Assembly: GCA_053919585.1 (NCBI GenBank)
Contig: JBSSHM010000258.1
Source: Euprymna scolopes
Taxonomy: Eukaryota
Length of the DNA stretch: 64,000 bases
Reading direction: 5' to 3' (one strand)
Part shown: positions 3,630-44,072 of the stretch, piece after piece
How positions within the stretch are numbered: the stretch's first letter is position 1
How the letters are laid out: the number at the start of each line of letters is the position of its first letter
Position numbers and translations under genes: made by a program
Notes under the pieces: generated by a model
What the model saw: only the letters and a program-made list of their open reading frames with translations
The model's database searches: none
Told to the model about the DNA's origin: nothing

Positions 3630-6392
3630 ATGAACGACAAACAGTTATTAAGTCCTTTTATTGAAGATTGTTTACATAAGTACTCGGATTTGGACTTAGA
3701 AGATGTGAGATTGGTTAAAGAATCTACACAATCTCAATTTCTGCACTGGTTAGAAGAGCATACAGCTGATTTAAATGAAGATGAATTCTTAACTAGCATG
3801 TGTGAACTAAGAAAAAAAACTTGGGCAAAATTAGCCTACTTAGAAGTTCATCAAAAATTATCAATTGAAGAGGGGGCAAGACAATTAAGCTATTATGCAA
3901 AAGCTTGTTTAGAGCATGTAGCAAATCATTGTTTTACTCTCTTATGTGAGCGATTTGGTATTCCGTGCAAAGAAGAGGGAAAAATAAAACCTATGCTATG
4001 GAGCATTTTATGTATGGGTAAGCTCGGAGGGAATGAACTTAACTTTTCCTCAGATATTGATATTATTTTATGTTATGACAATTATGGTGAAGAATTGCCT
4101 AATGATTACCTAAAAAATGGGGAGAGGGGTTGTCGTATTTCAGAACAAGAGTTTTATCAATATTTTGCTCGTTCACTAGCCAAGATATTTAATCAAAACT
4201 CTCAAGCTGATGTAGTATTTAGGTTAGATATGCGTTTGCGTCCGTTTGGGAGCAGTGGTGCGTTAGTTTGTAGTCATTCATTTTTGCAAAATTATCTGCA
4301 AAATCATGCCCGTGAATGGGAGAGACTGGCTTATGCTAAAGCCAGCATCATCAGTCCTCACCCGCAAATAACAGAAAAATTTTCTGCATTAATAATCCCC
4401 TTTGTTTATCGGCAATATACTGATTATGGGATTTTGAAATCCATTCGTGATATGCGAGATTTGATTGTTGATAGCTTACATCACAAACAACTTTCCAATA
4501 ACATTAAAAAAGGGTTTGGAGGCATTCGCTTACTGGAATTTAGTTTACAAAGCATTCAATTCACCTTATACACAAAATATCCTGATTTAAAAATACGAGG
4601 AGCTTTTGCATTTTTAAAGGCTTTAAAAAGCTTAGGAATTATGGATGAACAAGTGGACAAATTCTATCAATACCTTTGTTTTTTAAGGCGTTTAGAACAT
4701 CGCTTACAAATATGGCAAGACAAACAAACGCATGCCTTACCTGAAGAAGATGATTACAAACAATGGCAATGGTTAGCAGAGAGTATGCAGTACATAAATG
4801 TTGCTGATTTACAAGCAGAAATACAGCAAATAAGGACTCATGTGCATCAGATTTTTGAGAAAATCCTGCCTGATATTCCCAGTAAAGACTATGCCTTATT
4901 TCACAGCGATAAAACTTATGAAGAGTCTGATTTATGGGAGAGATTAGGGTTGGTAAAAAATGATGCAAACATCAAACTATTTAATCATTTTATTATTGGC
5001 TTATCAAATTTTTTATGCACACGAATTTGGAAGGAAGCCACGCAGCAAGCACAAGATAGATTTTCTCGATTATTACCACAGCTTATTAGCTTGATAGAAA
5101 CCTACTTAATAAACCAACAAGAAAAGCAAGAGAAATTTAATGATGAATCTAACTGGGAAAATTTATTTAGTTTGCTCACAGCCATTATCAGGCGTAGTGC
5201 CTACTTGAGTTTGCTACAGGAATATCCTCATGTATTAAACAGAGTGCTAATATGGAGCCAAGAACAACCGTGGCTTATCCAACAAGTGATTAACCATCCA
5301 ATATTGTTAGAAAGTATTATTAATAAAAAAAATTTACCTAAAGAAATCCATCGTATCGCTCTAAGAAAGCAATGTCAAGATATGATAAACAATCAACAAC
5401 TGGGTTATGAAAAAAAAATCAATCAATTGCGAGAGATTAAAATGACTGCTGTGTTTAAAACAGCTGAGTTGAATCAAAGTGAAAAAATAGGAACCTATCG
5501 ATTAAGTGATCATTTGACTAATATTGCACGTGAAATCGTCATTGCTGCCTTGCAAATTGCCATGCAAGATCTACAGCCACAATGGCAATCCAAAATAGAT
5601 ATAGATTGGGAGAATATTCCTATTTTATTTGTTGGTTATGGTAAGCTTGGAAGTTTTGAATTGGGTTATGGTTCGGATTTGGATATGGTTATTTTATATG
5701 ATGATAAATCCATTAATGCTCAATCTTACTTACCCTTTATATTAAGATTAGCTCGTAAAACGCTAGATATATTAAGCTTATATAGTTTAGCAGGAAAATG
5801 CTATGAAGTGGATTGTCGCCTTCGTCCAGATGGAGATAAAGGGCTATTAGTAACTGGAATTTCTCAATATAAAGATTATTTATTAAATAGGGCATGGACA
5901 TGGGAAAAACAAGCCTTAATTAAAGCAAGAAGTATTGCTGGCAATCGAGATTTGGCTAATCAATTTGTACATATTAGAAAAGATGTATTATCAGTAATTG
6001 AAGATAATCAAGCCCTATCAAAAGATATTATTGAAATGCGTGATAAAATGCGTCGCTCACTTGATCGATCTAACGATCAATATTTTCATATCAAACAAGG
6101 CTTGGGTGGAATGATTGATATTGAATTTCTCACTCAATATTGGGCAATCAAGCTTATTCCGATTTATCCAAATTTATTGCGTAGCCGTAGTGTCAGCACG
6201 TTATTAAGGAATCTATCTAAGCATACAGAATGTTTGCTACACACTGATAAATTAATTAAAATTTACCTAGATTACCGAGCATTCGTGCATCAATTAGCAT
6301 TAGATAATAGAAAATCAGTTGTTAGTAGTAAATTATTTGAAGAACAGCGTGAATTTGTTATCAAGCAATGGAAGTTAACTTTCAAAAATTAA
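3630..6392 (+). CDS. glnE: Bifunctional glutamine synthetase adenylyltransferase/deadenylylase
   Basis: Two nucleotidyltransferase domains (GKLGGNELNFSSDID; GKLGSFELGYGSDLD), DMRLRP/DCRLRP. Confidence 0.95.
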   Translation: MNDKQLLSPFIEDCLHKYSDLDLEDVRLVKESTQSQFLHWLEEHTADLNEDEFLTSMCELRKKTWAKLAYLEVHQKLSIEEGARQLSYYAKACLEHVANHCFTLLCERFGIPCKEEGKIKPMLWSILCMGKLGGNELNFSSDIDIILCYDNYGEELPNDYLKNGERGCRISEQEFYQYFARSLAKIFNQNSQADVVFRLDMRLRPFGSSGALVCSHSFLQNYLQNHAREWERLAYAKASIISPHPQITEKFSALIIPFVYRQYTDYGILKSIRDMRDLIVDSLHHKQLSNNIKKGFGGIRLLEFSLQSIQFTLYTKYPDLKIRGAFAFLKALKSLGIMDEQVDKFYQYLCFLRRLEHRLQIWQDKQTHALPEEDDYKQWQWLAESMQYINVADLQAEIQQIRTHVHQIFEKILPDIPSKDYALFHSDKTYEESDLWERLGLVKNDANIKLFNHFIIGLSNFLCTRIWKEATQQAQDRFSRLLPQLISLIETYLINQQEKQEKFNDESNWENLFSLLTAIIRRSAYLSLLQEYPHVLNRVLIWSQEQPWLIQQVINHPILLESIINKKNLPKEIHRIALRKQCQDMINNQQLGYEKKINQLREIKMTAVFKTAELNQSEKIGTYRLSDHLTNIAREIVIAALQIAMQDLQPQWQSKIDIDWENIPILFVGYGKLGSFELGYGSDLDMVILYDDKSINAQSYLPFILRLARKTLDILSLYSLAGKCYEVDCRLRPDGDKGLLVTGISQYKDYLLNRAWTWEKQALIKARSIAGNRDLANQFVHIRKDVLSVIEDNQALSKDIIEMRDKMRRSLDRSNDQYFHIKQGLGGMIDIEFLTQYWAIKLIPIYPNLLRSRSVSTLLRNLSKHTECLLHTDKLIKIYLDYRAFVHQLALDNRKSVVSSKLFEEQREFVIKQWKLTFKN

Positions 6393-6397
6393 AAATT

Positions 6398-6979
6398 CTA
6401 GGGCGTAAGTCCTCCAAAACCCATAAAGGATATTGCCATACATCCAGCTGTGATTAAAGCAATTGGTGCATGTTTAAATGGCATAGGGATGTCTGCACCA
6501 ACTAATCGCTCACGAATGGTTGAGAACAAAATTAATACAACCGTAAATCCCACGGCTGCACTAAAACCATACCATGCTGATTCAAATAAAGAGTTTGCAT
6601 GACGAGTATTCAAAAGTGCCACACCAAGCACCGCACAATTGCTGGTGATGAGTGGTAAATAAATACCCAGCATTTGATGAATTACAGGAACGAGCTTACG
6701 CATCATCAATTCGCAAATTCCTACAACGGAAGCAATTGTGATGATAAACACAATGGTTTGTAAATACACCACACCAAGTGGTAACAAAAGATAATGAAAT
6801 AGGGCGTAACTTAGAGTAGAAGTGGTCGTTAGCACAAAAGAGGTTGCTAACCCCATGCCTAATGCTGCTTCGGGTTTTTGTGATACCCCCATAAATGGAC
6901 ATAGTCCAAGAAACTTTACTAACACATAATTATTCACCAATACGGTGCCAATAAGAATCCAAATCCAATCCAAGTTCAA
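6398..6979 (-). CDS. rsxA: Rnf/Rsx electron transport complex subunit A
   Basis: VNNYVLVKFLGLCPFMGVS, LPLITSNCAVLG. Confidence 0.95.
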   Translation of the reverse strand: MNLDWIWILIGTVLVNNYVLVKFLGLCPFMGVSQKPEAALGMGLATSFVLTTTSTLSYALFHYLLLPLGVVYLQTIVFIITIASVVGICELMMRKLVPVIHQMLGIYLPLITSNCAVLGVALLNTRHANSLFESAWYGFSAAVGFTVVLILFSTIRERLVGADIPMPFKHAPIALITAGCMAISFMGFGGLTP

Positions 6980-7287
6980 ATCTAAAGAGTATTATTGTGT
7001 TTATTGTGATTCAAGCTATTTTATACAAAGGCAAAGATGCAAAATTTGTCTGGTAAAAGGTTGTAAAAATCGTGTACATATTCAATAAAAGCAACAAACA
7101 AAAGAGAGAACACGATTGATTAAAGCCTGAAATGATTATACCCTCAGTTTTTCAAGAATGCTACAAAATTAAAAACAGTACAAAGCAATAAGCAAAAATA
7201 GTGGCATTGCATAGCAAAATTATTCATCCCTATCACTTTACTCTTCTCCACAGGGATAAAAAATTAGGAAATAGGCTTTGGATTTGT

Positions 7288-7395
7288 TTATGGAATGGTT
7301 ACATCTAAGGTAACGGGGTCAGATTTACCCAAGTGGTTCATGGCATAAAGAGTAAATGTATATGTTCCTGCTCCTCCTAATGGGGTGGTGCACAT
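7288..7395 (-). pseudogene. Diverged fragment of the lipoprotein C-terminus (35 codons), copy 1
   Basis: Translates MCTTPLGGAGTYTFTLYAMNHLGKSDPVTLDVTIP*, homologous to ..NPLGGAGTYTFSVYAINHLGKAPKESITVVIP of the adjacent gene. Confidence 0.8.
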
Positions 7396-7483
7396 TCTCA
7401 AAGTCTCTGTAATAAATGGACAGTCCTTATGTTAGTTGATTATAGGTTAGTAAATATACTATATAAATATAAGCGATTTTCTC

Positions 7484-8656
7484 TTAAAATTTTCCTTCTG
7501 GAATCACGACAGTAATACTTTCTTTTGGTGCTTTGCCTAGATGATTGATGGCATAAACGCTGAAGGTGTATGTACCTGCTCCACCTAATGGATTGGTACG
7601 CACGTAAAGAGGAGCTTTATAAAAATCATCGCTATCTAATAAATGTAAAGTTTGTTTTCCATGTACTTTTGTTGAACTATTAAAGGTATTTTTCCTACCG
7701 ACACTATGCATTTGTGGAAATCCAGTGATGGTTTCATATTCAATGACATAGTATTGTGTATTCGGATCAATTCCTGTCCATTCTAATTCCACGGATTTGT
7801 CTGAATTGTAGCGGATAATTTTTAAACTGTTATCTGTAATACTGTCCTTCGGTGCCGTGGTAAAAGGCAAAAGGTGTGCTCGCATTATATTTCCCGTTAA
7901 TACGACTTCTATTTGTACTCTAAATGATTTTAAAGTAGAGTTGAATATAGATCCAAAATTCATGTTCCCACCAATTTCTCTTTTTGATGAAGGTCCTGGT
8001 CCATAAATATTCCACGGATCATGAATGCTATTATAAAATTGAATGTATAAGGCAGTATTATCTGAATATGCAATCTTATCCTCTTTATTAAGTATTTGGG
8101 TTCTACCAAGTGGTATCTCTTGGTTAAATACAATGTCCAAAATAGCCTCTTGCCTACCAGGAGGGTAAGTTGATTTCCCATTAATAACTGGAATGACTTC
8201 TATGGAATTCCAATCAAAGCGATCTGCTGTGCGTGTATTATCAGTTTTGACTGTGTAGGTGGCTGTATCAGATACTCCTAAGGAGTTATTATTTTTATCA
8301 AAGGCTTCTATAGTAAATTTATAGATGCCTTGTCGAACACCGATAATGTGATATCTACGACTAAAAAATCCCGTCATGGTGGGTACTTTATCTGAGTTAA
8401 TGTTGTAGTAAGAGACTTTAGCTGTTGGATTAGTCATTGTTTTTGCAGTAGTCCAGTTAGCAAATTTTTCCCATTCAATCCGCACATTGCCATGGCTAGT
8501 GGGTTCAAATATTTTCATGTATGAGGGGATGGAATTAGGATTAGGATTCTTATTTGAAACTGAATCATCAGAGGATGATGGACCACAGCCTTGAATAAAC
8601 AAAGCTAGAAATAACACTAAAGAGAATAGGGTAAAAGAGGTTATTTTTTTCATCAT
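7484..8656 (-). CDS. Surface lipoprotein with FN3/Ig-like domains, copy A (390 aa)
   Basis: Lipobox FIQG-C24, Ser/Asn/Pro linker, FN3-like patterns (VRIEW..YKFTIEAFD; VELEWT..YYVIEY..YTFSVYAIN); domain call inferred. Confidence 0.75.
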   Translation of the reverse strand: MMKKITSFTLFSLVLFLALFIQGCGPSSSDDSVSNKNPNPNSIPSYMKIFEPTSHGNVRIEWEKFANWTTAKTMTNPTAKVSYYNINSDKVPTMTGFFSRRYHIIGVRQGIYKFTIEAFDKNNNSLGVSDTATYTVKTDNTRTADRFDWNSIEVIPVINGKSTYPPGRQEAILDIVFNQEIPLGRTQILNKEDKIAYSDNTALYIQFYNSIHDPWNIYGPGPSSKREIGGNMNFGSIFNSTLKSFRVQIEVVLTGNIMRAHLLPFTTAPKDSITDNSLKIIRYNSDKSVELEWTGIDPNTQYYVIEYETITGFPQMHSVGRKNTFNSSTKVHGKQTLHLLDSDDFYKAPLYVRTNPLGGAGTYTFSVYAINHLGKAPKESITVVIPEGKF

Positions 8657-8766
8657 TTTTTGTATTTCAATCCTACATATATCTAGTTTAATACTATGTT
8701 AGTTGATTGTATCACTTTACTCTTCTCCACAGGGATAAAAAATTAGGAAATAGGCTTTGGATTTGT

Positions 8767-8874
8767 TTATGGAATGGTTACATCTAAGGTAACGGGGTCA
8801 GATTTACCCAAGTGGTTCATGGCATAAAGAGTAAATGTATATGTTCCTGCTCCTCCTAATGGGGTGGTGCACAT
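8767..8874 (-). pseudogene. Diverged fragment of the lipoprotein C-terminus, copy 2
   Basis: Identical to 7288-7395 at offset 1479. Confidence 0.8.
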
Positions 8875-8962
8875 TCTCAAAGTCTCTGTAATAAATGGAC
8901 AGTCCTTATGTTAGTTGATTATAGGTTAGTAAATATACTATATAAATATAAGCGATTTTCTC

Positions 8963-10147
8963 TTAAAATTTTCCTTCTGGAATCACGACAGTAATACTTT
9001 CTTTTGGTGCTTTGCCTAGATGATTGATGGCATAAACGCTGAAGGTGTATGTACCTGCTCCACCTAATGGATTGGTACGCACGTAAAGAGGAGCTTTATA
9101 AAAATCATCGCTATCTAATAAAAGTAAAGTTTGTTTTCCATGTACTTTTGTTGAACTATTAAAGGTATTTCTCCTACCGACACTATGCATTTGTGGAAAT
9201 CCAGTGATGGTTTCATATTCAATGACATAGTATTGTGTATTCGGATCAATTCCTGTCCATTCTAATTCCACGGATTTGTCTGAATTGTAGCGGATAATTT
9301 TTAAACTGTTATCTGTAATACTGTCCTTCGGTGCCGTGGTAAAAGGCAAAAGGTGTGCTCGCATTATATTTCCCGTTAATACGACTTCTATTTGTACTCT
9401 AAATGATTTTAAAGTAGAGTTGAATACAAATCCAAAACTTATGTCCCCACCAATTTCTCTTTTTGATGAAGGTCCTGGTCCATAAATATTCCACGGATTA
9501 TAAACGCCATTATAAAATTCAATGTATGTGCCAGTATTATTTGAATATGAAATCGTATCCTCTTTATTAGTTCTAGTAGCTTTATTAAGTATTTGGGTTC
9601 TACCAAGTGGTATCTCTTGGTTAAATACAATGTCCAAAATAGCCTCTTGCCTACCAGGAGGTCTAGTTGATTTCCCATTAATAACTGGAATGACTTCTAT
9701 GGAATTCCAATCAAAGCGATCTGCTGTGCGTGTATTATCAGTTTTGACTGTGTAGGTGGCTGTATCAGATACTCCTAAGGAGTTATTATTTTTATCAAAG
9801 GCTTCTATAGTAAATTTATAGATGCCTTGTCGAACACCGATAATGTGATATCTACGACTAAAAAATCCCGTCATGGTGGGTACTTTATCTGAGTTAATGT
9901 TGTAGTAAGAGACTTTAGCTGTTGGATTAGTCATTGTTTTTGCAGTAGTCCAGTTAGCAAATTTTTCCCATTCAATCCGCACATTGCCATGGCTAGTGGG
10001 TTCAAATATTTTCATGTATGAGGGGATGGGATTAGGATTCTTATTTGAAACTGAATCATCAGAGGATGATGGACCACAGCCTTGAATAAACAAAGCTAGA
10101 AATAACACTAAAGAGAATAGGGTAAAAGAGGTTATTTTTTTCATCAT
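8963..10147 (-). CDS. Surface lipoprotein with FN3/Ig-like domains, copy B (394 aa)
   Basis: Near-identical paralog of 7484-8656. Confidence 0.75.
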   Translation of the reverse strand: MMKKITSFTLFSLVLFLALFIQGCGPSSSDDSVSNKNPNPIPSYMKIFEPTSHGNVRIEWEKFANWTTAKTMTNPTAKVSYYNINSDKVPTMTGFFSRRYHIIGVRQGIYKFTIEAFDKNNNSLGVSDTATYTVKTDNTRTADRFDWNSIEVIPVINGKSTRPPGRQEAILDIVFNQEIPLGRTQILNKATRTNKEDTISYSNNTGTYIEFYNGVYNPWNIYGPGPSSKREIGGDISFGFVFNSTLKSFRVQIEVVLTGNIMRAHLLPFTTAPKDSITDNSLKIIRYNSDKSVELEWTGIDPNTQYYVIEYETITGFPQMHSVGRRNTFNSSTKVHGKQTLLLLDSDDFYKAPLYVRTNPLGGAGTYTFSVYAINHLGKAPKESITVVIPEGKF

Positions 10148-10302
10148 TTTTTGTATTTCAATCCTACATATATCTAGTTTAATACTATGTTAGTTAATTG
10201 TATCACTTTACTCTTCTCCACAGGGATAAAAAATTAGGGAATAGGCTTTGGATTTGTTTATGGAATTTTTACATCTAAGGTAACTTACATATGCATTAAC
10301 AT

Positions 10303-10885
10303 AGATTATCATTAATGTTAGTTTCTAAGTAAGATTATCATTAATGTTAGTTTCTAAGTAAGATTATCATTTGTTAGTTTCTAAGTAAGATTATCATTTG
10401 TTAGTTTCTAAGTAAGATTATCATTTGTTAGTTTCTAAGTAAGATTATCATTTGTTAGTTTCTAAGTAAGATTATCATTTGTTAGTTTCTAAGTAAGATT
10501 ATCATTTGTTAGTTTCTAAGTAAGATTATCATTTGTTAGTTTCTAAGTAAGATTATCATTTGTTAGTTTCTAAGTAAGATTATCATTTGTTAGTTTCTAA
10601 GTAAGATTATCATTTGTTAGTTTCTAAGTAAGATTATCATTTGTTAGTTTCTAAGTAAGATTATCATTTGTTAGTTTCTAAGTAAGATTATCATTTGTTA
10701 GTTTCTAAGTAAGATTATCATTTGTTAGTTTCTAAGTAAGATTATCATTTGTTAGTTTCTAAGTAAGATTATCATTTGTTAGTTTCTAAGTAAGATTATC
10801 ATTTGTTAGTTTCTAAGTAAGATTATCGTTTGTTAGTTTCTAAGTAAGATTATCGTTTGTTAGTTTCTAAGTAAGATTATCGTTT
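10303..10885. repeat. 27-bp tandem array (agattatcatttgttagtttctaagta), 21 full units plus a partial
   Basis: 2 x 29-bp variant, 17 x consensus, 2 x cgttt variant plus partial; stop codons in all six frames. Confidence 0.97.
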
Positions 10886-10892
10886 TTTTGTA

Positions 10893-10926
10893 TAAATTCG
10901 TGATTACCATAATAATCACGAATTTA
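10893..10926. promoter_or_regulatory. Perfect 14-6-14 inverted repeat (operator or recombination-site-like)
   Basis: taaattcgtgatta-ccataa-taatcacgaattta; palindrome seen directly, function inferred. Confidence 0.5.
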
Positions 10927-11040
10927 ACTTTTATGTAAAATTAGGAGAAATTAGAGGATTCTTCTGGTTAATTTAACGACTTTTTAAAAATTTTGTTTTG
11001 TTATGTTCTTTTTTTTAAAAATCAATTGGAGTGGTTCGTT

Positions 11041-12075
11041 ATGATACCGAGTACAGCCTTATTTGTGATTGGCATTCAAGGAACAATGATAAGTTCCGAT
11101 GAGAAATATTGGTTACAACATCCGTTGACTGCTGGAGTTATTTTATTTGCTAGAAATTATGAAAGCCCTGAACAAATTCAATTGTTGATTCAGACATTAA
11201 GGAATACGGCAAAGCATGATATTCTTATTATGGTTGATCAAGAAGGTGGGCGAGTTCAACGTTTTATTAAAGGGTTTACCAAAATCCCTCCTATGGCTGA
11301 TTTAGGGGTGATTTATGATAAAAATCCTGAAAATGGACTTCTTTTTAGCACAGCTTTGGGTTATGTGTTGGCTTATGAAATTGCACAGTGTGATGTTGAT
11401 TTTAGCATTGCTCCTATGCTGGATGTGGAAACGTCTGTATCAAATAGTAATGTGATTGGGGATAGAGCATTTAGCAAGGATATTGGCAAAATTTTCCCAT
11501 TAGCCAAAGCATTTTATCAAGGAATGCGTGAGGCTGGAATGAGTGGAGTGGGTAAACATTTTCCCGGTCATGGACATGTTTCTGCTGATTCGCATGAATC
11601 TCTGCCAATTTATGATGGGGATTTTGCTAGTTTGGAGGAAAATGACCTGCCCCCTTTTAAAGATTTAATTCATGCAGGCATCCCTGCAATAATGCCTGCT
11701 CATATACTTTATTCTCAAGTTGACCCAGATTTTCCTGCGGGTTTTTCTACTATATGGTTGAATGAAATTTTACGCAAAAAGCTTAATTTTTCTGGTTGTA
11801 TTATTAGTGATGATTTGAATATGGCTGGCGCTTCTGCTTATGGAAATATGGCTAAACGTGTTGCTTTAGCTACAAGAAATTGTGATTTGATTTTGGTGAG
11901 CCATCCTCCTGAAGATATCAAGAAGGCATTTGAGAGTCAGATTCCTTGGGAGAATCCTTTGAGACAGAAAAGAATTAATGCATTGCGAAGAAATAAAGAA
12001 GCTCTTAGTGCTCAGCTGTATAAAGACAAGTTGAATTTACTTAAAAAGCATGCGATTGTTACTTCTATTTCATAA
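11041..12075 (+). CDS. nagZ: Beta-N-acetylhexosaminidase (GH3)
   Basis: VDQEGGRVQR, KHFPGHG..DSH, SDDLNMAG; ATG 11041 preferred over TTG 10993. Confidence 0.95.
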   Translation: MIPSTALFVIGIQGTMISSDEKYWLQHPLTAGVILFARNYESPEQIQLLIQTLRNTAKHDILIMVDQEGGRVQRFIKGFTKIPPMADLGVIYDKNPENGLLFSTALGYVLAYEIAQCDVDFSIAPMLDVETSVSNSNVIGDRAFSKDIGKIFPLAKAFYQGMREAGMSGVGKHFPGHGHVSADSHESLPIYDGDFASLEENDLPPFKDLIHAGIPAIMPAHILYSQVDPDFPAGFSTIWLNEILRKKLNFSGCIISDDLNMAGASAYGNMAKRVALATRNCDLILVSHPPEDIKKAFESQIPWENPLRQKRINALRRNKEALSAQLYKDKLNLLKKHAIVTSIS

Positions 12076-12248: not shown

Positions 12249-13355
12249 TTAGATTGCAGAGTGAAAAAAGTATAATGCTTTTTGGATGATGTCTTTAATT
12301 CTATCGTATTCAGAGTAGTCTTCACGATTGTTTTTGTAGGAGTGGTAAACTTGACGCCAATTGTCTTTAAATACTATCTTTTTCTTTTTACTTGCTTCAA
12401 TATTTAGAGTATAGATTTTTTTGAGCAAATGATTGTCATCAGTGGCTAAAATGTCATGAGAATGCATGGATAATTGAACTTTTATAACATCCTTTCCACT
12501 ATTGGCAACGTTTTTAAATCCTAATTCCTCCAAAGTGCTTTCAATATAGCTTCGGTATTCACGCAAATTGTTATCAAGATTGATTTGTATTTTTTGTGTT
12601 TCTAAAGAAGGTTGCATAAATGATATGAAGTACTCCCTATGCTCTCCCGGATTTAGATAGATATTTCCTTGAATAGTTAAGAAATTCCCCGGTTTGGTGA
12701 TTTTAAATGTGTGCCAACCCGGTAGTAAGTTGTCTATTGTTTGAATATCTTTGAAATGATTGCCGTTGAATTGTATATCTATTTCTTGGATTTCTCCAGT
12801 AAAGCTGATGCTTGATCGTTGAGTGAGTTTTTTTAAGTTTTGTTTTAAATCCGTGTATTCTTGACGATGCTGTTGTTGTATTTTATTGAGTATAACGCCT
12901 AAATTTAAAGAAATAAGAAGATCGAGTCTTTGTAATTTCTTGTTGATTTCTTTTAGTTCTCCTGCCTGCCAGTTATTTGCATCGCCTATATCCTTATAGA
13001 TGTCTGTTTTTAGGTAATTAAGCATAGAAAAGTAGTCATCTGACATTAAGCGGATAACTACATTGGTTTTTTTTCCATCTCTGCTTCTTCCTAGATTTTG
13101 TATGGATAAGTGTTTGCTGTCAATATAGAGATCGTCTAGTGTAATATAACGAGAATTATTCGGCAATTGGCTATATAATCGTTTGGCAATTTTTCCTTGT
13201 GCCTTGTGAATGGCTTCTTTAATATTAGCCCCCTCACCTGTTTCTTTGAATAAAAGGTTGTTGACATAATCCTCTGCTTTTGATTGTGAAGTTAGTATGG
13301 CAAAAGCAACAAAGAATACAATGTAATAAATATTCTTATCTCTAATTTTTAACAT
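12249..13355 (-). CDS. Hypothetical exported protein, possibly with a PEGA-like domain
   Basis: Signal peptide; LLPGWHTFKITKPG resembles a PEGA-type strand. Confidence 0.5.
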   Translation of the reverse strand: MLKIRDKNIYYIVFFVAFAILTSQSKAEDYVNNLLFKETGEGANIKEAIHKAQGKIAKRLYSQLPNNSRYITLDDLYIDSKHLSIQNLGRSRDGKKTNVVIRLMSDDYFSMLNYLKTDIYKDIGDANNWQAGELKEINKKLQRLDLLISLNLGVILNKIQQQHRQEYTDLKQNLKKLTQRSSISFTGEIQEIDIQFNGNHFKDIQTIDNLLPGWHTFKITKPGNFLTIQGNIYLNPGEHREYFISFMQPSLETQKIQINLDNNLREYRSYIESTLEELGFKNVANSGKDVIKVQLSMHSHDILATDDNHLLKKIYTLNIEASKKKKIVFKDNWRQVYHSYKNNREDYSEYDRIKDIIQKALYFFHSAI

Positions 13356-15115: not shown

Positions 15116-16210
15116 TTATTTATTGTAACGGAGCAGTTGAGGATGTATCCATACTCCATTTTCTTGTATGAGTTCACCATCAAGGTAGACTTTTCCATTA
15201 GCTTCTTGATGACGAATAATCAAATCCCAATGTATACTGGAATCATTACCATTAGGTGCTTCATCATAACATTTGCCTAAAGCCATATGATTACTGCCCC
15301 CTATTTTTTCATCGAAAAGAATTGAATTTACTGGGGTTTGTATCATCTTATTGGTACCAAAAGCGAATTCTCCAAGATAGCATGCTCCTTCATCTGTATC
15401 AAGTATTTGTTGTAAATCATTTCTGTTATCACTATCAAAATCTATGACTTTACCTTCTTTAAATACCAAGCTTATCCATTGAAAGTCTTTTCCCATGTAT
15501 TGAGTGGGGGTATTGAAGTGTATATGTCCATTAACTTTGTTTCGATGAGGGGAAGTGAAAATTTCACCATCAGGCATATTGTGAATACCGTGGCATTTTA
15601 TCCAGTTTTGTCCACGAATATCAAGTTTGAGATCCGTGTTGTCTGCCACAATATGAACTTCTTTAGCTTGCTTAAGTAATTCTTTTAAGGCTTGTTGCTC
15701 ATCGCTAATTTTCTGCCAATCAATTAAGCATGCTTTAAATACAAAATCTTCCCATTTTTCAACACTTTGTTTGGCATTATTGGCTGATACTGTTGTCGGA
15801 TATTCAAATAAAACCCAACGTTTTTTGTGCAAAATATCAGAAATGGTTTTATTAACTTTTCTATGCCGTATGATTTTTGCTGATCGATTTGTGCCAATTC
15901 GGCACTGTTTCTATCAGCTAGAATCTGAATCATTGCATCGGTATTTTTTGCTTCAAGAATCTTGTGTTCTTGAGGAGGAAAGTCCAATTGCTTAGTATCT
16001 GCATTTTCATAGAATATTCGTGTTAGTTCAGCATCCACGTAATTTGTATGAGCAATGCCCCCCTACTTTGATACATTCACGATAAATTTCTTTCAATAAT
16101 GGGTAACCTTCCATACCGTAAAGAATAATCAGCACATTTTCACCTGCTTGTAATTTAATTGAGTAGTTGACTAATAATTTTGCTAATTCAGAGAGTCTTT
16201 TATCTTGCAT
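15116..16210 (-). CDS. M29 (AmpS/AmpT-type) aminopeptidase, split by two frameshifts
   Basis: Consecutive ORFs 16028-16210, 15724-16038, 15116-15832; NMPDGEIFT, GEFAFG, LFDEKIGG..HMALG, SIHWD. Confidence 0.88.
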
Positions 16211-16221
16211 AGTATGGATAG

Positions 16222-16732
16222 TTAGTTTGTTTTAATAATAATGGGAATAATATTGAATGTTTTTTCAATGTTTTGAGCGATTTTTCTTGCTGCTTTTTTA
16301 TCGCTAATTTCTTGCTCTAGTCGAACTGCATAGATGTTTGATGTGGTTTTTCTTTGTTTATATAGTTTGGTATTGTAGTTATTTTTTTTCAACATTTTTA
16401 TCAATTCTTGAGCATAGTTTTTTTCACTATAAGAAGCTATTTGGACAATCCATACAGGGTTTTCTTGCTTGGGGTCAATTTTTGTTATAGTCGATTCACT
16501 TTGTTTAATCTCTTTAGCATTATTAGGCAAAGTGATTTTACGAACAATAACTTTATTCGTCAATTCGTTTTTTGTTGATTAGTTATTTCTTTGTGTTGCT
16601 TTCAGAAGATTGTTTGTTTGTTTGATTAGAATCTATATTTGAAGAAATAAACACAATTAAGCTAATCAATACAATAATGGAACCAATCCATATTGTTGCA
16701 CCAATTAATAGTGCTTTAAATTCTAGATTCAT
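16222..16732 (-). CDS. dedD: SPOR-domain cell division protein, frameshifted
   Basis: N-terminal TM helix from ATG 16732 ([15 protein letters not shown]..), SPOR-like WIVQIASYS; downstream of folC. Confidence 0.65.
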
Positions 16733-18090
16733 CGGCAAGATACTCACGTTTCAATCTTTGTGTTTTTAATGGCATTTTAACTAACCCTATTAATAGGAAT
16801 GATCCGAAAACCACGTACCTACTATCAGAATTATCTTTGTTTTGATTGATTTTGTGTATAAAATCATTTTCTTGGTAAAATTCGATAGCATTAAGCTTGA
16901 CTCCATTTTTTATTAAAGCTTGTAGGATTTGATCTTTTTTCATTGCTCGAATAGTGTCTGTAAGCTCAACGATGTGCCATGTATGAATAATGGGTTGGGC
17001 AAGTTTTATAATCGTTTCAACCTCTTTATCATCCAAACATGTAAAAATCGCATCAATTTTTTTTTCATTAGATAGGTGAGATAAAACAGAGACCAAATTA
17101 TTCACAGACTCTGGATTATGTGCAACATCTAACCAACCTTGTATACTGTCATAATGAAAAGGCTCTAAACGACCAAATCGTTGCATAGTTTTCAATGCTA
17201 AATTTGTCGCATCAGAATTTAATTCAATGGCAATGCTCATCAAACTAGTTATGGACAAGGCTAAATTATTTAATCTAACGATTTGAGATTGATAGGGTTT
17301 TTCTAAAAAGTTCATAAAATTAATGCTAAGACTCTTTTTTTTTGCTTTATCTTTATCTTCATAGGTATAAATCTCTCTCTCTATATCTATGCAAAAATCT
17401 TGTTTATTAAGCAATATATTGGCATTTTTTTGCTTGGCGATCTGCAAACATTCATGAGGTAATTCAGATGCTAAAATCACGGTTTTATTTATTCTTAATA
17501 ATTCCTGCCTTTTCCTGAGCAATTTTTTCTAAAGATCTCCTAACCATGTTTATGCTCGAGGCTAATTGAGGTGATAATTGCACAATCATTTTCAATGATA
17601 TTGGTTGCATCTAAACGACCACCTAGCCCAACTTCAAGAATAATCAGTGTACACTGAAGTTGTTTAAGCACCATAGTGCACATAAGGTTGTGAACTCAAA
17701 GTAGCTTAGAGTAATATTGTGTTTTTTTGCAACAATGAAAAACAGTATTGAACGCTTCTAACAAGTATTCATCACTTATATTACCACCATTGATACGAAT
17801 TCTCTCATTAAAAGAAACTAAATGTGGAGAAGTATAAAGCCCTACTTCTCTTGATGTGCAAGAGCAATGCTCTCCGTAAAATAACAAGTTGTTCCTTTGC
17901 CATTACTACCTGCCACAGTAATAATCTTAGTTGATTCTGAGAATTTAGTGACTTGTAGGAGTTTAGCAGCCTGATTGACTGCCTCTAATCCGGGGTTAAT
18001 TAGATGAGAAGGTGCATTTTCCTCTAACCCAAGCAAAAGCTTCTTTTATAGATTGAAAAGTAAGCAAGAAAGTTAAGTGTTAAAATGACA
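16716..18090 (-). CDS. folC: Dihydrofolate/folylpolyglutamate synthase, multiple frameshifts; start approximate
   Basis: Fragments [40 protein letters not shown]. Confidence 0.9.
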
Positions 18091-18098
18091 AATATAGC

Positions 18099-18981
18099 TT
18101 AGATGCTTGCCATGGATGGCTGGTCTTTCAATATGCACAGTATTTCGTATATTTTTATTGGCAGACGACTACGTTTGACCACCATATCAATCGCACCATG
18201 TTCGAGCAAAAATTCACTGGTTTGAAAGCCTTCTGGAAGATTTTCTCGTACAGTTTGTTCAATTACTCGGCGACCTGCAAAACCAATGGTTGCTTTAGGT
18301 TCTGCAATGATAATATCACCTAGCATGGCAAAACTAGCAGAGACCCCTCCCATCGTTGGATCGGTGAGTACAGAGATAAAAGGAACTCGTTGTTTATTCA
18401 TTTGCTTAATTATTGCACTGGTTTTAGCCATTTGTGTCAGTGAAAACATGGACTCTTGATTCTTGCTCCACCACTTGATGAAAAGCAGATAAAAGGATTA
18501 TTCTATCTAAAGCATATTGTGCCGCTCGAACAAATTTTTCACCAACCACTGCCCCCATAGAGCCACCCATGTAGGTAAATTCAAACGCTGCAGTAACCAC
18601 GGATAATCCTTTTAGTGTGCCAGCAATACAAATAAGTGCTTCTTTTTCTTGGGTGTTTTTTGTAGCTTTGCTAATTCTATCGGTATACTTGACGCTGTCT
18701 TTAAATTTGAGTACATCAACTGGCGTAAGATAGGGGGATAGTTCAAGTTGATTCTCTTCATCTAAGAAGGATTCTAAGCGTTTGCGAGCAGTAATACGCA
18801 TGTGGTGTCCACATTCGGGCAAACATAGGCTTGTTTTTCCACTTCATTGTGATAGAGCGTGGCATCACAAGCATTACATTTTAACCACAGCCCTTCGGGA
18901 ACATTCAGTTTTTGCTCCATTTTCTTCTTCATCATGTTCCCATAAAATCTTTTTAGGGTTTAATTTGTCTAACCAATTCAT
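18099..18981 (-). CDS. accD: Acetyl-CoA carboxylase carboxyltransferase beta subunit, frameshifted
   Basis: MNWLDK start, zinc finger, [34 protein letters not shown]. Confidence 0.95.
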
Positions 18982-19009
18982 AATTGTTTTTATTCACTTA
19001 TAGCATTTT

Positions 19010-19795
19010 TTAATTTTGCAGTAAACTGCCCGACTTTTTTATCCCACTACTCACATCACTATTATAATCTGCCAGTAAGCTGATTATTTGGGAACCAACG
19101 ACTATTCCATCAGCATGTTTAGAAAGTTGCTTAGCACTCTCTACATCTTTTACTCCAAAACCAACTATGACTGGGATATCAGTATGATTTTTTATTTGAC
19201 TAATTGATTCGCCAATTGCTTTTTGTTGAGATTGTAAAGAATCACTACCTGTTACTCCTTTAAGGGCGACGTAGTATATAATCCAGAGGCATATTTTATA
19301 AATATTTCTGTCTTTCTTTAGAAGTGGTTGGAGCAACCAAAATAATGCGAGCAATTGCATTATTCTCACATATTCTACCCCAAGTATCTTTAGGTTCCGG
19401 CTGTAAGTCAACCGTTAGTAAACCATCAACACCATTCTCTTTAGCTTGCTTAGCATAGTTTTCCCAACCAAAAGCTTCAATTGGATTGGCATAACCCATT
19501 AATACTAATGTGTATGTTGATTATTTTTTCTAAATTCAGCAACTAAAGAAAGTACTTTTTCTAAATTCATGCCATTCTTAATGGCAGTAAAACTGGATTG
19601 TTGAATAATTGGTCCATCAGCGACAGGATCAGAAAATGGTACACCTATTTCTATAATATCAGCACCATTTTCAACCAATGCATGTAGTAGTGGTAATGTA
19701 CTTTCTTCGGTAGGATATCCCGCTGTAATAAAGGGGATTAGAGCCACTTTTTCTTTTGACTTCAGTTCGTTAAATAGATGATTGATTCGGGACAT
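19010..19795 (-). CDS. trpA: Tryptophan synthase alpha chain, frameshifted
   Basis: EIGVPFSDPVADGP, MGYANP, GVTG, VGFGV across three ORF fragments. Confidence 0.95.
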
Positions 19796-19825
19796 AAGTG
19801 AATAGATAAAAATAATCTGTTTTTT

Positions 19826-21033
19826 TAGTTTACATTTGTCTTTTTTTTCAATAGTACGTACAGAGTCTATATCTTTATCACCTCTTCCTGATAAAACAGA
19901 CAATGATGTGTTTATCTTTAGATAAATTTTGTGCTATTTTTTTTGCATAAGCCAAAGCGTGACTGGTTCAAGTGCAGGGATAATGCCTTCTGTACGAGTC
20001 ACCTCATAAAAAGCCTCTATTTTTCATGATCATCAGCATAGGAGTATTTTACACGTTTCATATCTTTAAGATAGGAATGTTCAGGCCCTACTCCGGGATA
20101 GTCTAAACCTGCTGAGATTGATTGGGTATCCATTATTTGCCCATTATCATCCATCATCAAGTAAGTGCGATTACCATGCAAAATCCCAGGTTTTCCAGCA
20201 CATAAAGGAGCAGCATGTTGATTGTTAGAAAGCCCTAGTCCGCCTGCCTCAACACCATGAATTTCTACCTCTTGATCGTTTAGAAAGGGGTAAAATAATC
20301 CCATTGCATTTGAACCCCCGCCAACGCAAGCAACCAGAATATCAGGTAATTTACCAATTTGGGCAACACTTTGTTCACGAGTTTCTTCACCTATAATTTT
20401 TTGAAAATCTCTTACCATCTCTGGATAAGGATGTGGACCAGCAACTGTACCAATAGCATAAAAAGTGTTATCAACATTTGTTACCCAGTCTCTCAATGCT
20501 TCGTTTAGAGCATCTTTTAAGGTGCGTGTTCCAGACTTTACTGGTACTACTTCTGCTCCTAGAAGTTGCATACGATAGACGTTAATGGCTTGACGGGAAA
20601 CATCTTTTTCACCCATGTACACCACACAGGGGATATCTAACAAGGCTGAGACGGTAGCACTTGCAACACCATGTTGTCCTGCTCCTGTTTCTGCAATAAT
20701 GCGTGTTTTACCCATTTTTTTAGCCAGTAAAATTTGACCAATGGTATTATTAATCTTGTGTGCACCAGTGTGGTTAAGATCTTCTCGTTTAAAATAAATT
20801 TGTGCCCCACCAACTTGATTGGACCATTTTTTTGCATGGTATAGAGGGGTTGGACGCCCAACATAAGAAGTTAAAAGATTTTTTATTTCGGCAAGAAATT
20901 GAGGGTCGTTTTTATATTTCTCATAAGCTTTGGTGAGTTCATCAAGTGGGTAGATTAGATTTTCAGCAACAAAACGTCCGCCAAATTCCCCAAAATATCC
21001 TTGTGAGTCTGGATTTTGAAAAAAGTCTTTCAT
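19826..21033 (-). CDS. trpB: Tryptophan synthase beta chain, C-terminal frameshifts; end approximate
   Basis: [45 protein letters not shown] in shifted frame. Confidence 0.96.
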
Positions 21034-42488: not shown

Positions 42489-44072
42489 ATGTCAAATTAC
42501 TCGCCAGTTATCTTATTAAGTATTTTCTGTATAGGTTTGCTTAATGCATGTGGCCTCAACAATGCACCACAAATTGATTTTCCCGATTCAAATGACATTG
42601 ACTATAGTAGCAACCGGAGAGCTAGCTATAATTTTGACTGCAAAACTCCCTCTTCTATCAATCTAGGTATTATCAGTGATGAATATTATCCAAATCAGTA
42701 TTTTCTTAATCAAATGAAAGTGAAAGAAGCTTGGAAAATCCTTTTAAATGAAAACAAATGTTTTGGTAATAACGTCAAAGTAACAGTGGTTGATTCTAGT
42801 ATTGACGCAAAACATGAAGATCTTGATAAAAATATGGATATTAGCGGTTCTTATAATTTTATAACGGGAGTATCAGGAAGTATTGCAGAACCTCAAAAAA
42901 ACCATGGCACAAGCGTTGCTGGAATTATCGCATCTGGTGCTAATGGTTTTGGTGTGGTAGGTATTGCCAATAAAAGTCGAATTCAATCGTATAATCTCCT
43001 GAACAACAATACCGATGCCAATAAACTAATCGCTATGAATACCAGTGGAGATGTCTCTAATAATAGCTGGGGACCTAGTGATAGATATCCAATCTTAGAA
43101 ACAATAAACTCTAACCTAAAAATTGGCATTGATGAAGGAATAAAAAATGGCAGAGACGGAAAAGGAACAATTTATGTATGGGCAGCAGGAAATGGTGGAA
43201 AAAATTACAACAATAGCAACTATGATGGCTATGCTAACTATCGAAAAGTTATTGCTGTTGGGGCATTAACAACTCAAGGAACACAAGCTGACTTTTCGGA
43301 AAAAGGAGCAAATTTATTAGTTTCTGCCCCAGGTGATGCCATTTATACGACTAAAATCACCCCTCAAACATTTATCAACAATGACTGCAACGGTATCAAT
43401 TGTCGATACACCAAAACATTTAATGGCACTAGTGCTGCTGCACCCATGGTGTCTGGTGTAGTAGCTCTATTACTGGAAGCCAAACCTTCTCTAGGTTGGC
43501 GTGATGTACGCCTTATCCTTGCACGTAGTGCTTCAAAAATAGATAGTAGTAATAGTGATTGGAAACAAAATGGAGATGGTTTGTGGGTAAATCATCAATA
43601 TGGCTATGGGCTAGTTGATGCAGAAGCTGCAATAAAATTAGCTAAAAATTGGGCTAATGTAGCTACAGAAGTTAGCTACACAACTTCTCAACACTACACC
43701 ATAAATAATAAAATAGAGTACACAACTCCTGCAAATTCTGTTGATTTCACACTTTCCATAGCCAATGGTCAGACCAACCTATCTTCTTTAGAATCTGTTG
43801 AATTAATAATTGATTCTGATCATAGCTACTGGGCAGATCTAACGATTGTATTAATTAGCCCTCAAGGAACAAAAAGTGTTATCACAGAAACTCATCTTTG
43901 CAATCAACAATGTAGCTCACAAAATGGACAAAGCCTATCTGGCTTTGTCTTTAGCAGTGCTCGATTAATAGGAGAAAATCCTATAGGAAATTGGACAATA
44001 CGCATTGAAGATGGATTCAAAAAAGATTCAGGTACAGTCAATAAAATCACTCTAAATCTACACGGCACATAA
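42489..44072 (+). CDS. S8 kexin/furin-like serine protease lipoprotein with P-domain
   Basis: Lipobox LNAC; VVDSSID, HGTSVAG, AAGNGG, NGTSAAAP; P-domain (DLTIVLISPQGT, GENPIGNWTIRIED). Confidence 0.9.
   Translation: MSNYSPVILLSIFCIGLLNACGLNNAPQIDFPDSNDIDYSSNRRASYNFDCKTPSSINLGIISDEYYPNQYFLNQMKVKEAWKILLNENKCFGNNVKVTVVDSSIDAKHEDLDKNMDISGSYNFITGVSGSIAEPQKNHGTSVAGIIASGANGFGVVGIANKSRIQSYNLLNNNTDANKLIAMNTSGDVSNNSWGPSDRYPILETINSNLKIGIDEGIKNGRDGKGTIYVWAAGNGGKNYNNSNYDGYANYRKVIAVGALTTQGTQADFSEKGANLLVSAPGDAIYTTKITPQTFINNDCNGINCRYTKTFNGTSAAAPMVSGVVALLLEAKPSLGWRDVRLILARSASKIDSSNSDWKQNGDGLWVNHQYGYGLVDAEAAIKLAKNWANVATEVSYTTSQHYTINNKIEYTTPANSVDFTLSIANGQTNLSSLESVELIIDSDHSYWADLTIVLISPQGTKSVITETHLCNQQCSSQNGQSLSGFVFSSARLIGENPIGNWTIRIEDGFKKDSGTVNKITLNLHGT

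What the first reader, a model, noticed from the sequence alone, without database searches (positions are those of the whole stretch)
7484..10147. Twin surface lipoproteins that differ only by amino-acid-changing mutations, concentrated in one domain
Seen: in a manual codon alignment about 19 codons differ and I found no synonymous difference; the ~300-bp intergenic parts are identical apart from one base. Fifteen changed codons plus an 18-bp in-frame indel (NK-ATRT-NK) lie in a ~55-aa patch of the central domain (A: KIAYSDNTALYIQFYNSIHD..NMNFGSI; B: TISYSNNTGTYIEFYNGVYN..DISFGFV). The FN3-like ends are nearly invariant. Inference: strong diversifying selection on a ligand-, host- or phage-facing surface of an uncharacterised constant-scaffold/variable-domain lipoprotein family.
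Basis: partly seen in the sequence, partly recalled or inferred. Interest (0 to 1): 0.85.

Follow-up and report, generated by a model that had tools for sequence, protein, structure and literature searches.

The report
Twin lipoprotein genes diverging by selection
Two tandem copies of an almost orphan bacterial lipoprotein gene differ only by amino-acid-changing mutations packed into one 44-codon patch, a statistically solid sign of adaptive divergence in a protein whose target, fold and surface exposure are still unknown.

Summary
Gene A (7484-8656, minus strand, 390 aa) and gene B (8963-10147, minus strand, 394 aa) are tandem copies of a 1.48-kb unit. They differ by 21 substitutions in 18 codons, all nonsynonymous. 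They also differ by a 6-bp and an 18-bp in-frame indel, and by one base in 306 nt of non-coding sequence.

Sixteen substitutions (15 codons) and the 18-bp indel lie in 44 codons of the central domain.

- **Selection:** neutrality is rejected. Random placement gives P(no synonymous change) = 0.001. A codon-model test against omega = 1 gives p = 0.001 for the gene and 0.004 for the patch, with omega at least about 3.
- **Clustering:** p is about 1e-11.
- **Protein:** a lipobox signal peptide, a tether, an FN3-like domain, an unknown central domain of about 135 aa, and a second FN3-like domain. Only one distant homologue turned up among 1.84 billion representative proteins, and it too is least conserved in the centre.
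- **Diversity-generating retroelement (DGR):** disfavoured.

Three points stay untested. No reads were available to confirm the tandem assembly. Both structure predictions failed (pLDDT 34). Surface exposure is assumed, not shown. The window is a 66.7-kb bacterial contig inside a 5.9-Gb eukaryote assembly.

This is a real, tidy example of a known kind of evolution in a new family.

The parts
8963..10147 (-). Gene B: 394-aa lipoprotein paralogue (promoter-distal side of the satellite; the first copy as read on the minus strand)
   Evidence: ORF; 95% identical to A
7484..8656 (-). Gene A: 390-aa lipoprotein paralogue
   Evidence: ORF; distant full-length homologue P0001
7946..8077 (-). Variable patch of gene A (codons 194-237): 16 substitutions in 15 codons, none synonymous. 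It has two sub-patches (codons 194-213 and 231-237) separated by an invariant 17-aa spacer.
9425..9587 (-). Variable patch of gene B (codons 198-241) plus the 18-bp insertion at 9570-9587 (NKATRT). The insertion is flanked by the direct repeat ACT(T)AATAAAG.
8533..8538 (-). 6-bp indel (present in A only) in the imperfect AATCCT repeat that encodes the Asn-Pro tether
8165..8167 (-). Codon 164 of A: TAC (Tyr), against AGA (Arg) in B at 9662-9664. All three bases differ.
8585..8656 (-). Signal peptide with lipobox FIQGC (Cys24, Gly at +2). The identical sequence lies at 10076-10147 in B.
   Evidence: PROSITE-type lipobox regex matches; sequence
7231..7318 (-). 88-nt direct repeat R1, bounding the duplicated unit
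8710..8797 (-). 88-nt direct repeat R2, identical to R1. Its end forms the unit junction GTGATA|CAAT.
10201..10288 (-). 88-nt direct repeat R3, with 3 mismatches to R1 and R2. It lies upstream of gene B and abuts the satellite.
7288..7416 (-). Relic of the C-terminal FN3 end of an older paralogue (53% aa identity to residues 345-387, one in-frame TAA)
8767..8895 (-). Second, identical copy of the relic, lying between genes B and A
10303..10885 (-). 27-bp satellite, 21.4 copies, 99% identical. Every unit carries AACTAACA, the motif also found about 40 nt upstream of each gene's ATG.

Best explanation
This is a recent, genuine tandem duplication of a lipoprotein gene in an AT-rich gammaproteobacterium-like cobiont of a large-genome eukaryote. 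The duplication probably arose by unequal crossover between 88-nt direct repeats that already flanked the gene.

The protein has five parts: a lipid-anchoring signal peptide and Cys; a Ser/Asn/Pro tether; an FN3-like domain; a central beta-rich domain of about 135 aa and unknown fold; and a second FN3-like domain. After duplication, or while gene conversion kept the rest of the units identical, positive selection fixed amino-acid changes almost only in a 44-codon segment of the central domain. The cell now carries two isoforms with the same scaffold and the same upstream 137 nt, but a different recognition or antigenic patch.

Shown: the duplication anatomy, the nonsynonymous-only and clustered divergence, the lipobox, and the FN3-like ends.

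Inferred: outer-membrane or surface location, the patch being a binding or epitope surface, and the selective agent. That agent could be host immunity or receptor, a phage, or a competitor's effector.
For: - Unit structure and junctions.
- 21 nonsynonymous against 0 synonymous substitutions, and 1 difference in 306 non-coding nt.
- Neutrality rejected: P(0 synonymous) = 0.0011; likelihood-ratio test p = 0.001 for the gene and 0.004 for the patch, with omega >= ~3 at the 95% level.
- Clustering p = 8e-12.
- Of the 15 changed patch residues, 10 are polar or small in both copies and 3 are conservative I/V or M/I swaps. This is what a surface with minor packing adjustments would look like.
- Lipobox in A, B and P0001.
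- FN3 signal.
- The centre is the least conserved part against P0001: 19% identity, against 37-38% for the ends.
- G+C content equals that of the contig, and the neighbours are housekeeping genes. The gene is therefore resident, not a recent import.
- An assembly of 925 contigs for 5.9 Gb implies long reads, which would span the 3-kb locus. This last point is inference.
Against: - There are only two sequences. No polarity, outgroup or population sample is available.
- The patch-only Fisher test is modest (p = 0.02).
- No reads were available to confirm the tandem arrangement.
- No usable structure (pLDDT 34), so exposure of the variable residues is untested.
- A Gly at +2 lipoprotein in a proteobacterium may face the periplasm rather than the outside.
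- The rest of the bacterial genome is missing from the assembly. Remote donors or mutator elements therefore cannot be excluded.
Confidence: 0.66

Rival explanations
1. Imported mosaic. The patch of one copy was replaced by recombination or gene conversion with a diverged allele from another strain or a lost paralogue. The differences would then have arisen elsewhere over a longer time, not after this duplication.
For: - The differences form one sharply bounded block with identical flanks, the usual footprint of a conversion tract.
- The locus carries relics of older paralogues.
- Most of the genome is not in the assembly.
Against: - A diverged donor should bring synonymous differences. None occurs at about 27 synonymous sites of the patch, against 16 changes at 105 nonsynonymous sites.
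- No third copy of the patch exists in the whole assembly.
- The five substitutions outside the block, in codons 164, 322 and 338, do not fit a single tract.
- Even if this reading is true, the donor lineage must have been under omega > 1.
Confidence: 0.15
2. Assembly artefact. The locus is single-copy, and two strain alleles were chained in tandem through the 88-nt repeat.
For: - The unit is bounded by direct repeats that create a cycle in an assembly graph.
- The contig is a small, probably low-coverage cobiont fragment.
- No reads could be examined.
Against: - R3 differs from R1 and R2 at 3 positions, so the exact shared stretch is only about 37 nt.
- Gene A is preceded by an R1-type repeat, not the R3-type repeat that a single-copy locus would place upstream.
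- An assembly of 5.9 Gb in 925 contigs is almost certainly long-read, and reads of more than 10 kb would span the locus. This is inference.
- The nonsynonymous-only pattern would remain true for alleles.
Confidence: 0.07
3. Targeted hypermutation. Both patches are variable repeats of a diversity-generating retroelement (or another programmed mutator) whose reverse transcriptase and template repeat lie in the unassembled part of the genome.
For: - The changes are restricted to a stretch of about 130 nt and sit almost only at codon positions 1 and 2.
- DGRs diversify lipoproteins such as Legionella LdtA, can act on remote targets more than 100 kb away, and can give 3n indels (PMC5758913).
- Most of this genome is missing.
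Against: - 6 of 16 patch differences involve no adenine in either copy.
- 41 adenines are intact in both copies, including 14 at third codon positions and 17 in the invariant spacer. There is no AAY-codon design.
- The patch is central, about 460 nt from the stop codon, not C-terminal.
- No third copy of the patch in the assembly.
- No Avd family.
- No reverse transcriptase among the ORFs from 0 to 51 kb.
- Substitutions also occur 90 nt upstream and 250-300 nt downstream of the patch.
Confidence: 0.04
4. Chance. The divergence is neutral or relaxed, and it happens to lack synonymous changes.
For: Only 21 substitutions; host-associated bacteria with decaying genes have raised dN/dS.
Against: P(0 synonymous) = 0.001 and likelihood-ratio test p = 0.001. 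Clustering p = 8e-12. Relaxation cannot push omega above 1.
Confidence: 0.01

Closest known systems
Neisseria Opa-type multigene surface proteins (several complete gene copies with hypervariable regions)
   Same: Complete, separately expressible copies share conserved framework sequence and differ in short hypervariable regions. Diversity comes from duplication and recombination (review PMC4534519).
   Different: Opa proteins are beta-barrel proteins, not lipoproteins. They phase-vary through pentamer repeats in the signal-peptide coding region, and no such coding repeat occurs here. Here there are only two copies, adjacent to each other, with no sequence relationship to Opa.
Cassette-driven variable lipoproteins and antigens (Borrelia VlsE, Anaplasma Msp2)
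   Same: A constant scaffold with a central variable region. VlsE is a lipoprotein. Truncated relics of paralogues lie next to the expressed gene (PMC4534519).
   Different: Those systems need silent cassettes homologous to the variable region. Here the only relics cover the C-terminal FN3 end, not the variable patch, and no third copy of the patch exists in the available sequence.
DGR-diversified lipoproteins (Legionella LdtA)
   Same: A lipoprotein of a Gram-negative bacterium with a short stretch that changes only at the amino-acid level (PMC5758913).
   Different: No template repeat, reverse transcriptase or Avd was found. The changes are not adenine-specific. The patch is central, not C-terminal. 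No CLec or DUF1566-type fold signal.
Surface lipoproteins built from tandem beta-sandwich domains (Bacteroidota SusE/F-like proteins; FN3 or Big_5 domain proteins)
   Same: A lipid anchor, a flexible tether and Ig/FN3-type domains. Language-model look-alikes are FN3 and Big_5 proteins.
   Different: No Pfam model reaches its threshold. The bacterium is of gammaproteobacterial type, and no glycan-utilisation genes lie nearby.

Membership tests
Bacterial lipoprotein (signal peptidase II substrate) | N-terminal basic region, hydrophobic core and a lipobox ending in Cys within the first ~35 residues | tested here: met
   KK at residues 3-4, a hydrophobic core, and FIQGC with Cys24. The PROSITE-type pattern matches A, B and P0001. 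Lipidation itself is not testable here.
Fibronectin type III domain (Pfam PF00041) | Score above the Pfam gathering threshold | tested here: not met
   No fn3 hit. Only sub-threshold Ig_J, He_PIG and Y_Y_Y hits.
Fibronectin type III domain (Pfam PF00041) | Alignable to bona fide FN3 repeats, with the B-strand Trp and the F-strand Tyr-x-[FV]-x-[VI]-x-A motif | tested here: met
   Residues 74-143 hit the repeats of P0003 (library-wide E = 1.9e-8). Those repeats are Pfam fn3 (5.8e-32), and the identity is 39-40%. The C domain shares the F-strand motif with the N domain, and its match to tenascin FN3 has E = 0.16.
Diversity-generating retroelement target | A template repeat nearly identical to the variable region | tested here: not met
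   Only the two gene copies match 7900-8150 in the whole assembly. Caveat: most of the bacterial genome is absent.
Diversity-generating retroelement target | Differences confined to template adenines (A-to-N), with codons designed as AAY | tested here: not met
   6 of 16 differences involve no A. 41 shared adenines are intact, 14 of them at third codon positions.
Diversity-generating retroelement target | A reverse transcriptase (and usually Avd) nearby | tested here: not met
   No PF05635 (Avd) hit in the assembly. No RT among the ORFs >= 150 aa from 0 to 51 kb. The ORFs from 51 to 66.7 kb were not scanned.
Cassette-based antigenic variation (VlsE/Msp2 type) | Silent partial copies covering the variable region | tested here: not met
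   The relics cover only residues 345-387. There is no extra copy of the patch.
Young tandem paralogues under positive selection | omega significantly above 1 between the copies | tested here: met
   Likelihood-ratio test p = 0.001 (gene) and 0.004 (patch); 95% lower bound of omega about 3; simulation P = 0.0011.
Young tandem paralogues under positive selection | Both copies physically present on one molecule | not testable with these tools
   No sequencing run was listed. Only the assembly itself supports this.

The most novel reading that the evidence does not exclude
The locus may be a self-contained variation module rather than a one-off duplication. In this reading, 88-nt direct repeats that carry half of an extended -10-like promoter (TGATACAAT at the junction) let the gene amplify and contract. 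Each new copy would then be driven apart in one 44-codon patch. The adjacent 21-copy satellite shares the AACTAACA motif found upstream of every gene and relic, and it would act as a recombination or regulatory element. Alternatively, an unknown, non-DGR targeted mutator could act on the patch.
Probability: 0.1. Interest if true: 0.7.

Novelty: new member of a known kind. Interest (0 to 1): 0.42.

Why it matters
If the pair is real, it gives a very clean natural experiment. The two isoforms of one scaffold differ at 15 clustered positions and almost nowhere else, so the functional patch of an otherwise uncharacterised FN3-flanked lipoprotein family is already marked. Swapping the patch between the copies would test directly what the protein recognises or evades in a host-associated bacterium. 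The finding also flags a protein family that is essentially absent from current databases. The evolutionary phenomenon itself, diversifying selection on duplicated envelope proteins, is well known.

Tried and rejected
Homologue searches:
- A word-based search of 5.8 billion proteins found nothing with the single protein, and only P0001 with the profile.
- Exhaustive HMMER over 1.84 billion representatives gave P0001, one generic FN3 hit (P0003) and one spurious repeat protein (P0002).
- Scans of genome contigs (lipoprotein and GlnE), metagenome contigs and viral contigs found nothing. The bacterium's relatives and synteny could therefore not be examined.
- Pfam, NCBIfam, PHROGs, PADLOC and PDB sequence searches gave no hit above threshold.
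- Rfam found nothing in 6000-12000.

Structure: AlphaFold2 gave pLDDT 34.0 with the single sequence and 33.9 with the 3-sequence alignment. No fold search or surface mapping was attempted on those models.

Reads: two look-ups listed no run, so read laying could not be used.

The DNA of P0001's contig was not retrievable.

Readings rejected:
- DGR.
- An overlapping alternative-frame ORF as the real gene. The ORFs at 7960-8181 and 9439-9678 also change amino acids, and the long frame has a homologue.
- Neutral drift.

The taxon of the bacterium was not determined.
Full report
**Context.** The window is contig C173 (66,660 bp) of a 5.9-Gb, 925-contig assembly. It has 35% G+C and is densely packed with bacterial housekeeping genes: trpS, glnE, rsxA, nagZ, epmA, efp, an rpoH-like sigma factor, cysIJ, hemCD and a TRAP transporter. 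It is therefore a bacterial cobiont or contaminant contig inside a eukaryote assembly. The assembly holds a single nagZ and no bacterial rpoB, so nearly all of this bacterium's genome is missing. Any statement that something is absent from the genome covers only these 66.7 kb. Several genes look truncated or split (Peptidase_M29, Mur_ligase_C, SBP_bac_5), which hints at a host-restricted lifestyle.

**Anatomy of the locus.** All features below are read on the minus strand.
- A 27-bp satellite of 21.4 copies lies at 10303-10885.
- It is followed by an 88-nt element, R3 (10201-10288).
- Unit B (8710-10200) contains gene B (8963-10147) and ends with a relic and R2 (8710-8797).
- Unit A (7231-8709) contains gene A (7484-8656) and ends with the same relic and R1 (7231-7318).
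- Unique sequence and rsxA follow.

The relic (7288-7416 and 8767-8895) is the decayed C-terminal end of an older paralogue. It shares 53% amino-acid identity with residues 345-387 and has one in-frame stop. R1 and R2 are identical, and R3 differs from them at 3 of 88 positions. This layout is what unequal crossover between an upstream and a downstream copy of R would produce, with the exchange in the last ~37 nt of R. The locus has therefore gone through more than one round of duplication and decay.

**The observation.** The unit-to-unit nucleotide alignment gives 21 substitutions inside the coding sequence, in 18 codons, and every one changes the amino acid. There are two in-frame indels. 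One is 6 bp in the imperfect AATCCT repeat of the tether. The other is 18 bp, flanked by an ACT(T)AATAAAG direct repeat, and looks like replication slippage. The 306 nt of non-coding unit sequence differ at one base (8705/10196). Sixteen substitutions in 15 codons lie in A codons 194-237. They form two sub-patches (194-213 and 231-237) around an invariant 17-residue spacer. Codon 164 differs at all three bases. K322R and H338L are the only changes in the C-terminal domain.

**Statistics.** Gene A has 253 synonymous and 917 nonsynonymous sites, and the patch has 27 and 105.

| Test | Result |
|---|---|
| Random placement of 13 transitions + 8 transversions, stops disallowed (whole gene) | 5.7 synonymous changes expected; P(0) = 0.0011 |
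| Same test, patch only | 4.4 expected; P(0) = 0.005-0.006 |
| Fisher exact test | p = 0.006 (gene), 0.02 (patch) |
| GY94 (F3x4) pairwise likelihood-ratio test, omega = 1 rejected, whole gene | 2dlnL = 10.86, p = 0.001 |
| Same test, patch | 2dlnL = 8.26, p = 0.004 |
| Profile likelihood, 95% lower bound of omega | about 3 (gene), about 2.4 (patch) |
| Binomial test for 16 of 21 changes in 44 of 389 codons | p = 8e-12 |

The pattern is not chance and it is not relaxed constraint.

**What the protein is.** Both copies start with a signal peptide that ends in a lipobox (FIQGC, Cys24, Gly at +2). A Ser/Asn/Pro-rich tether follows. No Pfam, NCBIfam, PHROG or PADLOC model reaches threshold. Residues 74-143 match the repeats of P0003 (library-wide E = 1.9e-8). 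Those repeats are canonical Pfam fn3, and the identity is 39-40%. The C-terminal domain shares the FN3 F-strand motif with the N-terminal domain and weakly matches tenascin FN3. Language-model look-alikes are FN3 proteins for the whole chain and Big_5 Ig-like proteins for the centre; these are leads only.

Exhaustive HMMER over 1.84 billion representatives found one true relative, P0001. It is 331 aa long, has a lipobox, aligns over its full length at 24-29% identity, and comes from a 9-kb metagenomic contig. Identity to P0001 is 38% in the N domain, 19% in the centre and 37% in the C domain. The centre is therefore the fast-evolving part over deep time as well.

**Mechanism.** The best reading is a young tandem pair whose central patch was driven apart by positive selection. 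Gene conversion may be keeping everything else identical. Ten of the 15 changed patch residues are polar or small in both copies. Three are conservative I/V or M/I swaps, and two switch polarity. This fits a mainly exposed beta-hairpin-like surface, but it is inference, because both AlphaFold runs failed. Outer-membrane or surface location is inferred from the lipobox alone. A periplasm-facing protein that counters an incoming effector or host enzyme is not excluded.

**Rivals.**
- *DGR.* This rival deserves attention because DGRs diversify lipoproteins, can act on remote targets and can create 3n indels (PMC5758913). Several results argue against it here. Six of 16 differences involve no adenine. 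Forty-one adenines are untouched in both copies, 14 of them at third codon positions. The patch is central. No template repeat, Avd or reverse transcriptase was found on the contig.
- *Imported conversion tract.* A tract from a diverged allele would explain the sharp block. It should carry synonymous differences, and it does not.
- *Tandem mis-assembly of two alleles.* This cannot be tested, because no run was listed. It is unlikely for a long-read-scale assembly. It also conflicts with the R-repeat variants, since gene A is preceded by an R1-type repeat and not an R3-type repeat. It would not remove the selection signal in any case.

**Comparison with known systems and verdict.** In kind, this is the familiar picture of duplicated envelope proteins with hypervariable regions (Opa, Wsp, VlsE/Msp2; PMC4534519). 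It has no silent cassettes for the variable part and no phase-variable coding repeats. The family itself is essentially new to the databases. I rate it a real and clean, but not categorically new, finding. Its weak points are the two-sequence sample, the missing read support and the missing structure.

Noticed in passing
window 10303-10885: A 27-bp satellite of 21.4 copies, 99% identical, lies directly upstream of the locus. It is followed at 10893-10926 by a 14-bp-stem inverted repeat. No Rfam match.
   Followed up: partly
window 7430-7437, 8697-8704, 8909-8916, 10188-10195 and every satellite unit: The motif AACTAACA occurs 33 times in the window, against 4.2 expected, and 25 of those lie in this locus. 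Upstream of both genes and both relics it is preceded by a -10-like TAYAAT. At the genes this reads TGATACAAT and straddles the R/unit junction, so it may mark the promoter and transcript start.
   Followed up: partly
window 7288-7416 and 8767-8895: Relic of an older paralogue's C-terminal FN3 end. It now sits in a 35-codon mini-ORF that begins with ATG, just downstream of a near-consensus TTTATA-17-TATAAT promoter-like site.
   Followed up: partly
whole contig G000:C173 (66,660 bp): A bacterial contig inside a 5.9-Gb eukaryote assembly. The assembly holds no bacterial rpoB and only one nagZ, so the rest of this bacterium is missing. GlnE has no close relative among the GTDB species representatives by pattern scan.
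   Followed up: partly
window 15116-15832, 16716-17522, 17523-20016, 48275-49439: Probable gene decay. The Peptidase_M29 gene lacks its N-terminal third, one ORF carries only Mur_ligase_C, a 2.5-kb stretch has no ORF >= 150 aa, and an SBP_bac_5 gene is split into two ORFs.
   Followed up: no
window 12249-13355 (-): A 368-aa ORF with a signal-peptide-like N-terminus and no hit in Pfam, NCBIfam, PHROGs or PADLOC. It lies just beyond nagZ and tRNA-His.
   Followed up: no
window 7960-8181 (-), 9439-9678 (-), 9522-9755 (+): Short alternative-frame and antisense ORFs overlap the variable patch in both copies. Their products also differ between the copies. They are probably chance ORFs.
   Followed up: partly
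window 42489-44072 (+): A subtilase with a proprotein-convertase P-domain (kexin-like architecture) in a bacterial contig.
   Followed up: no
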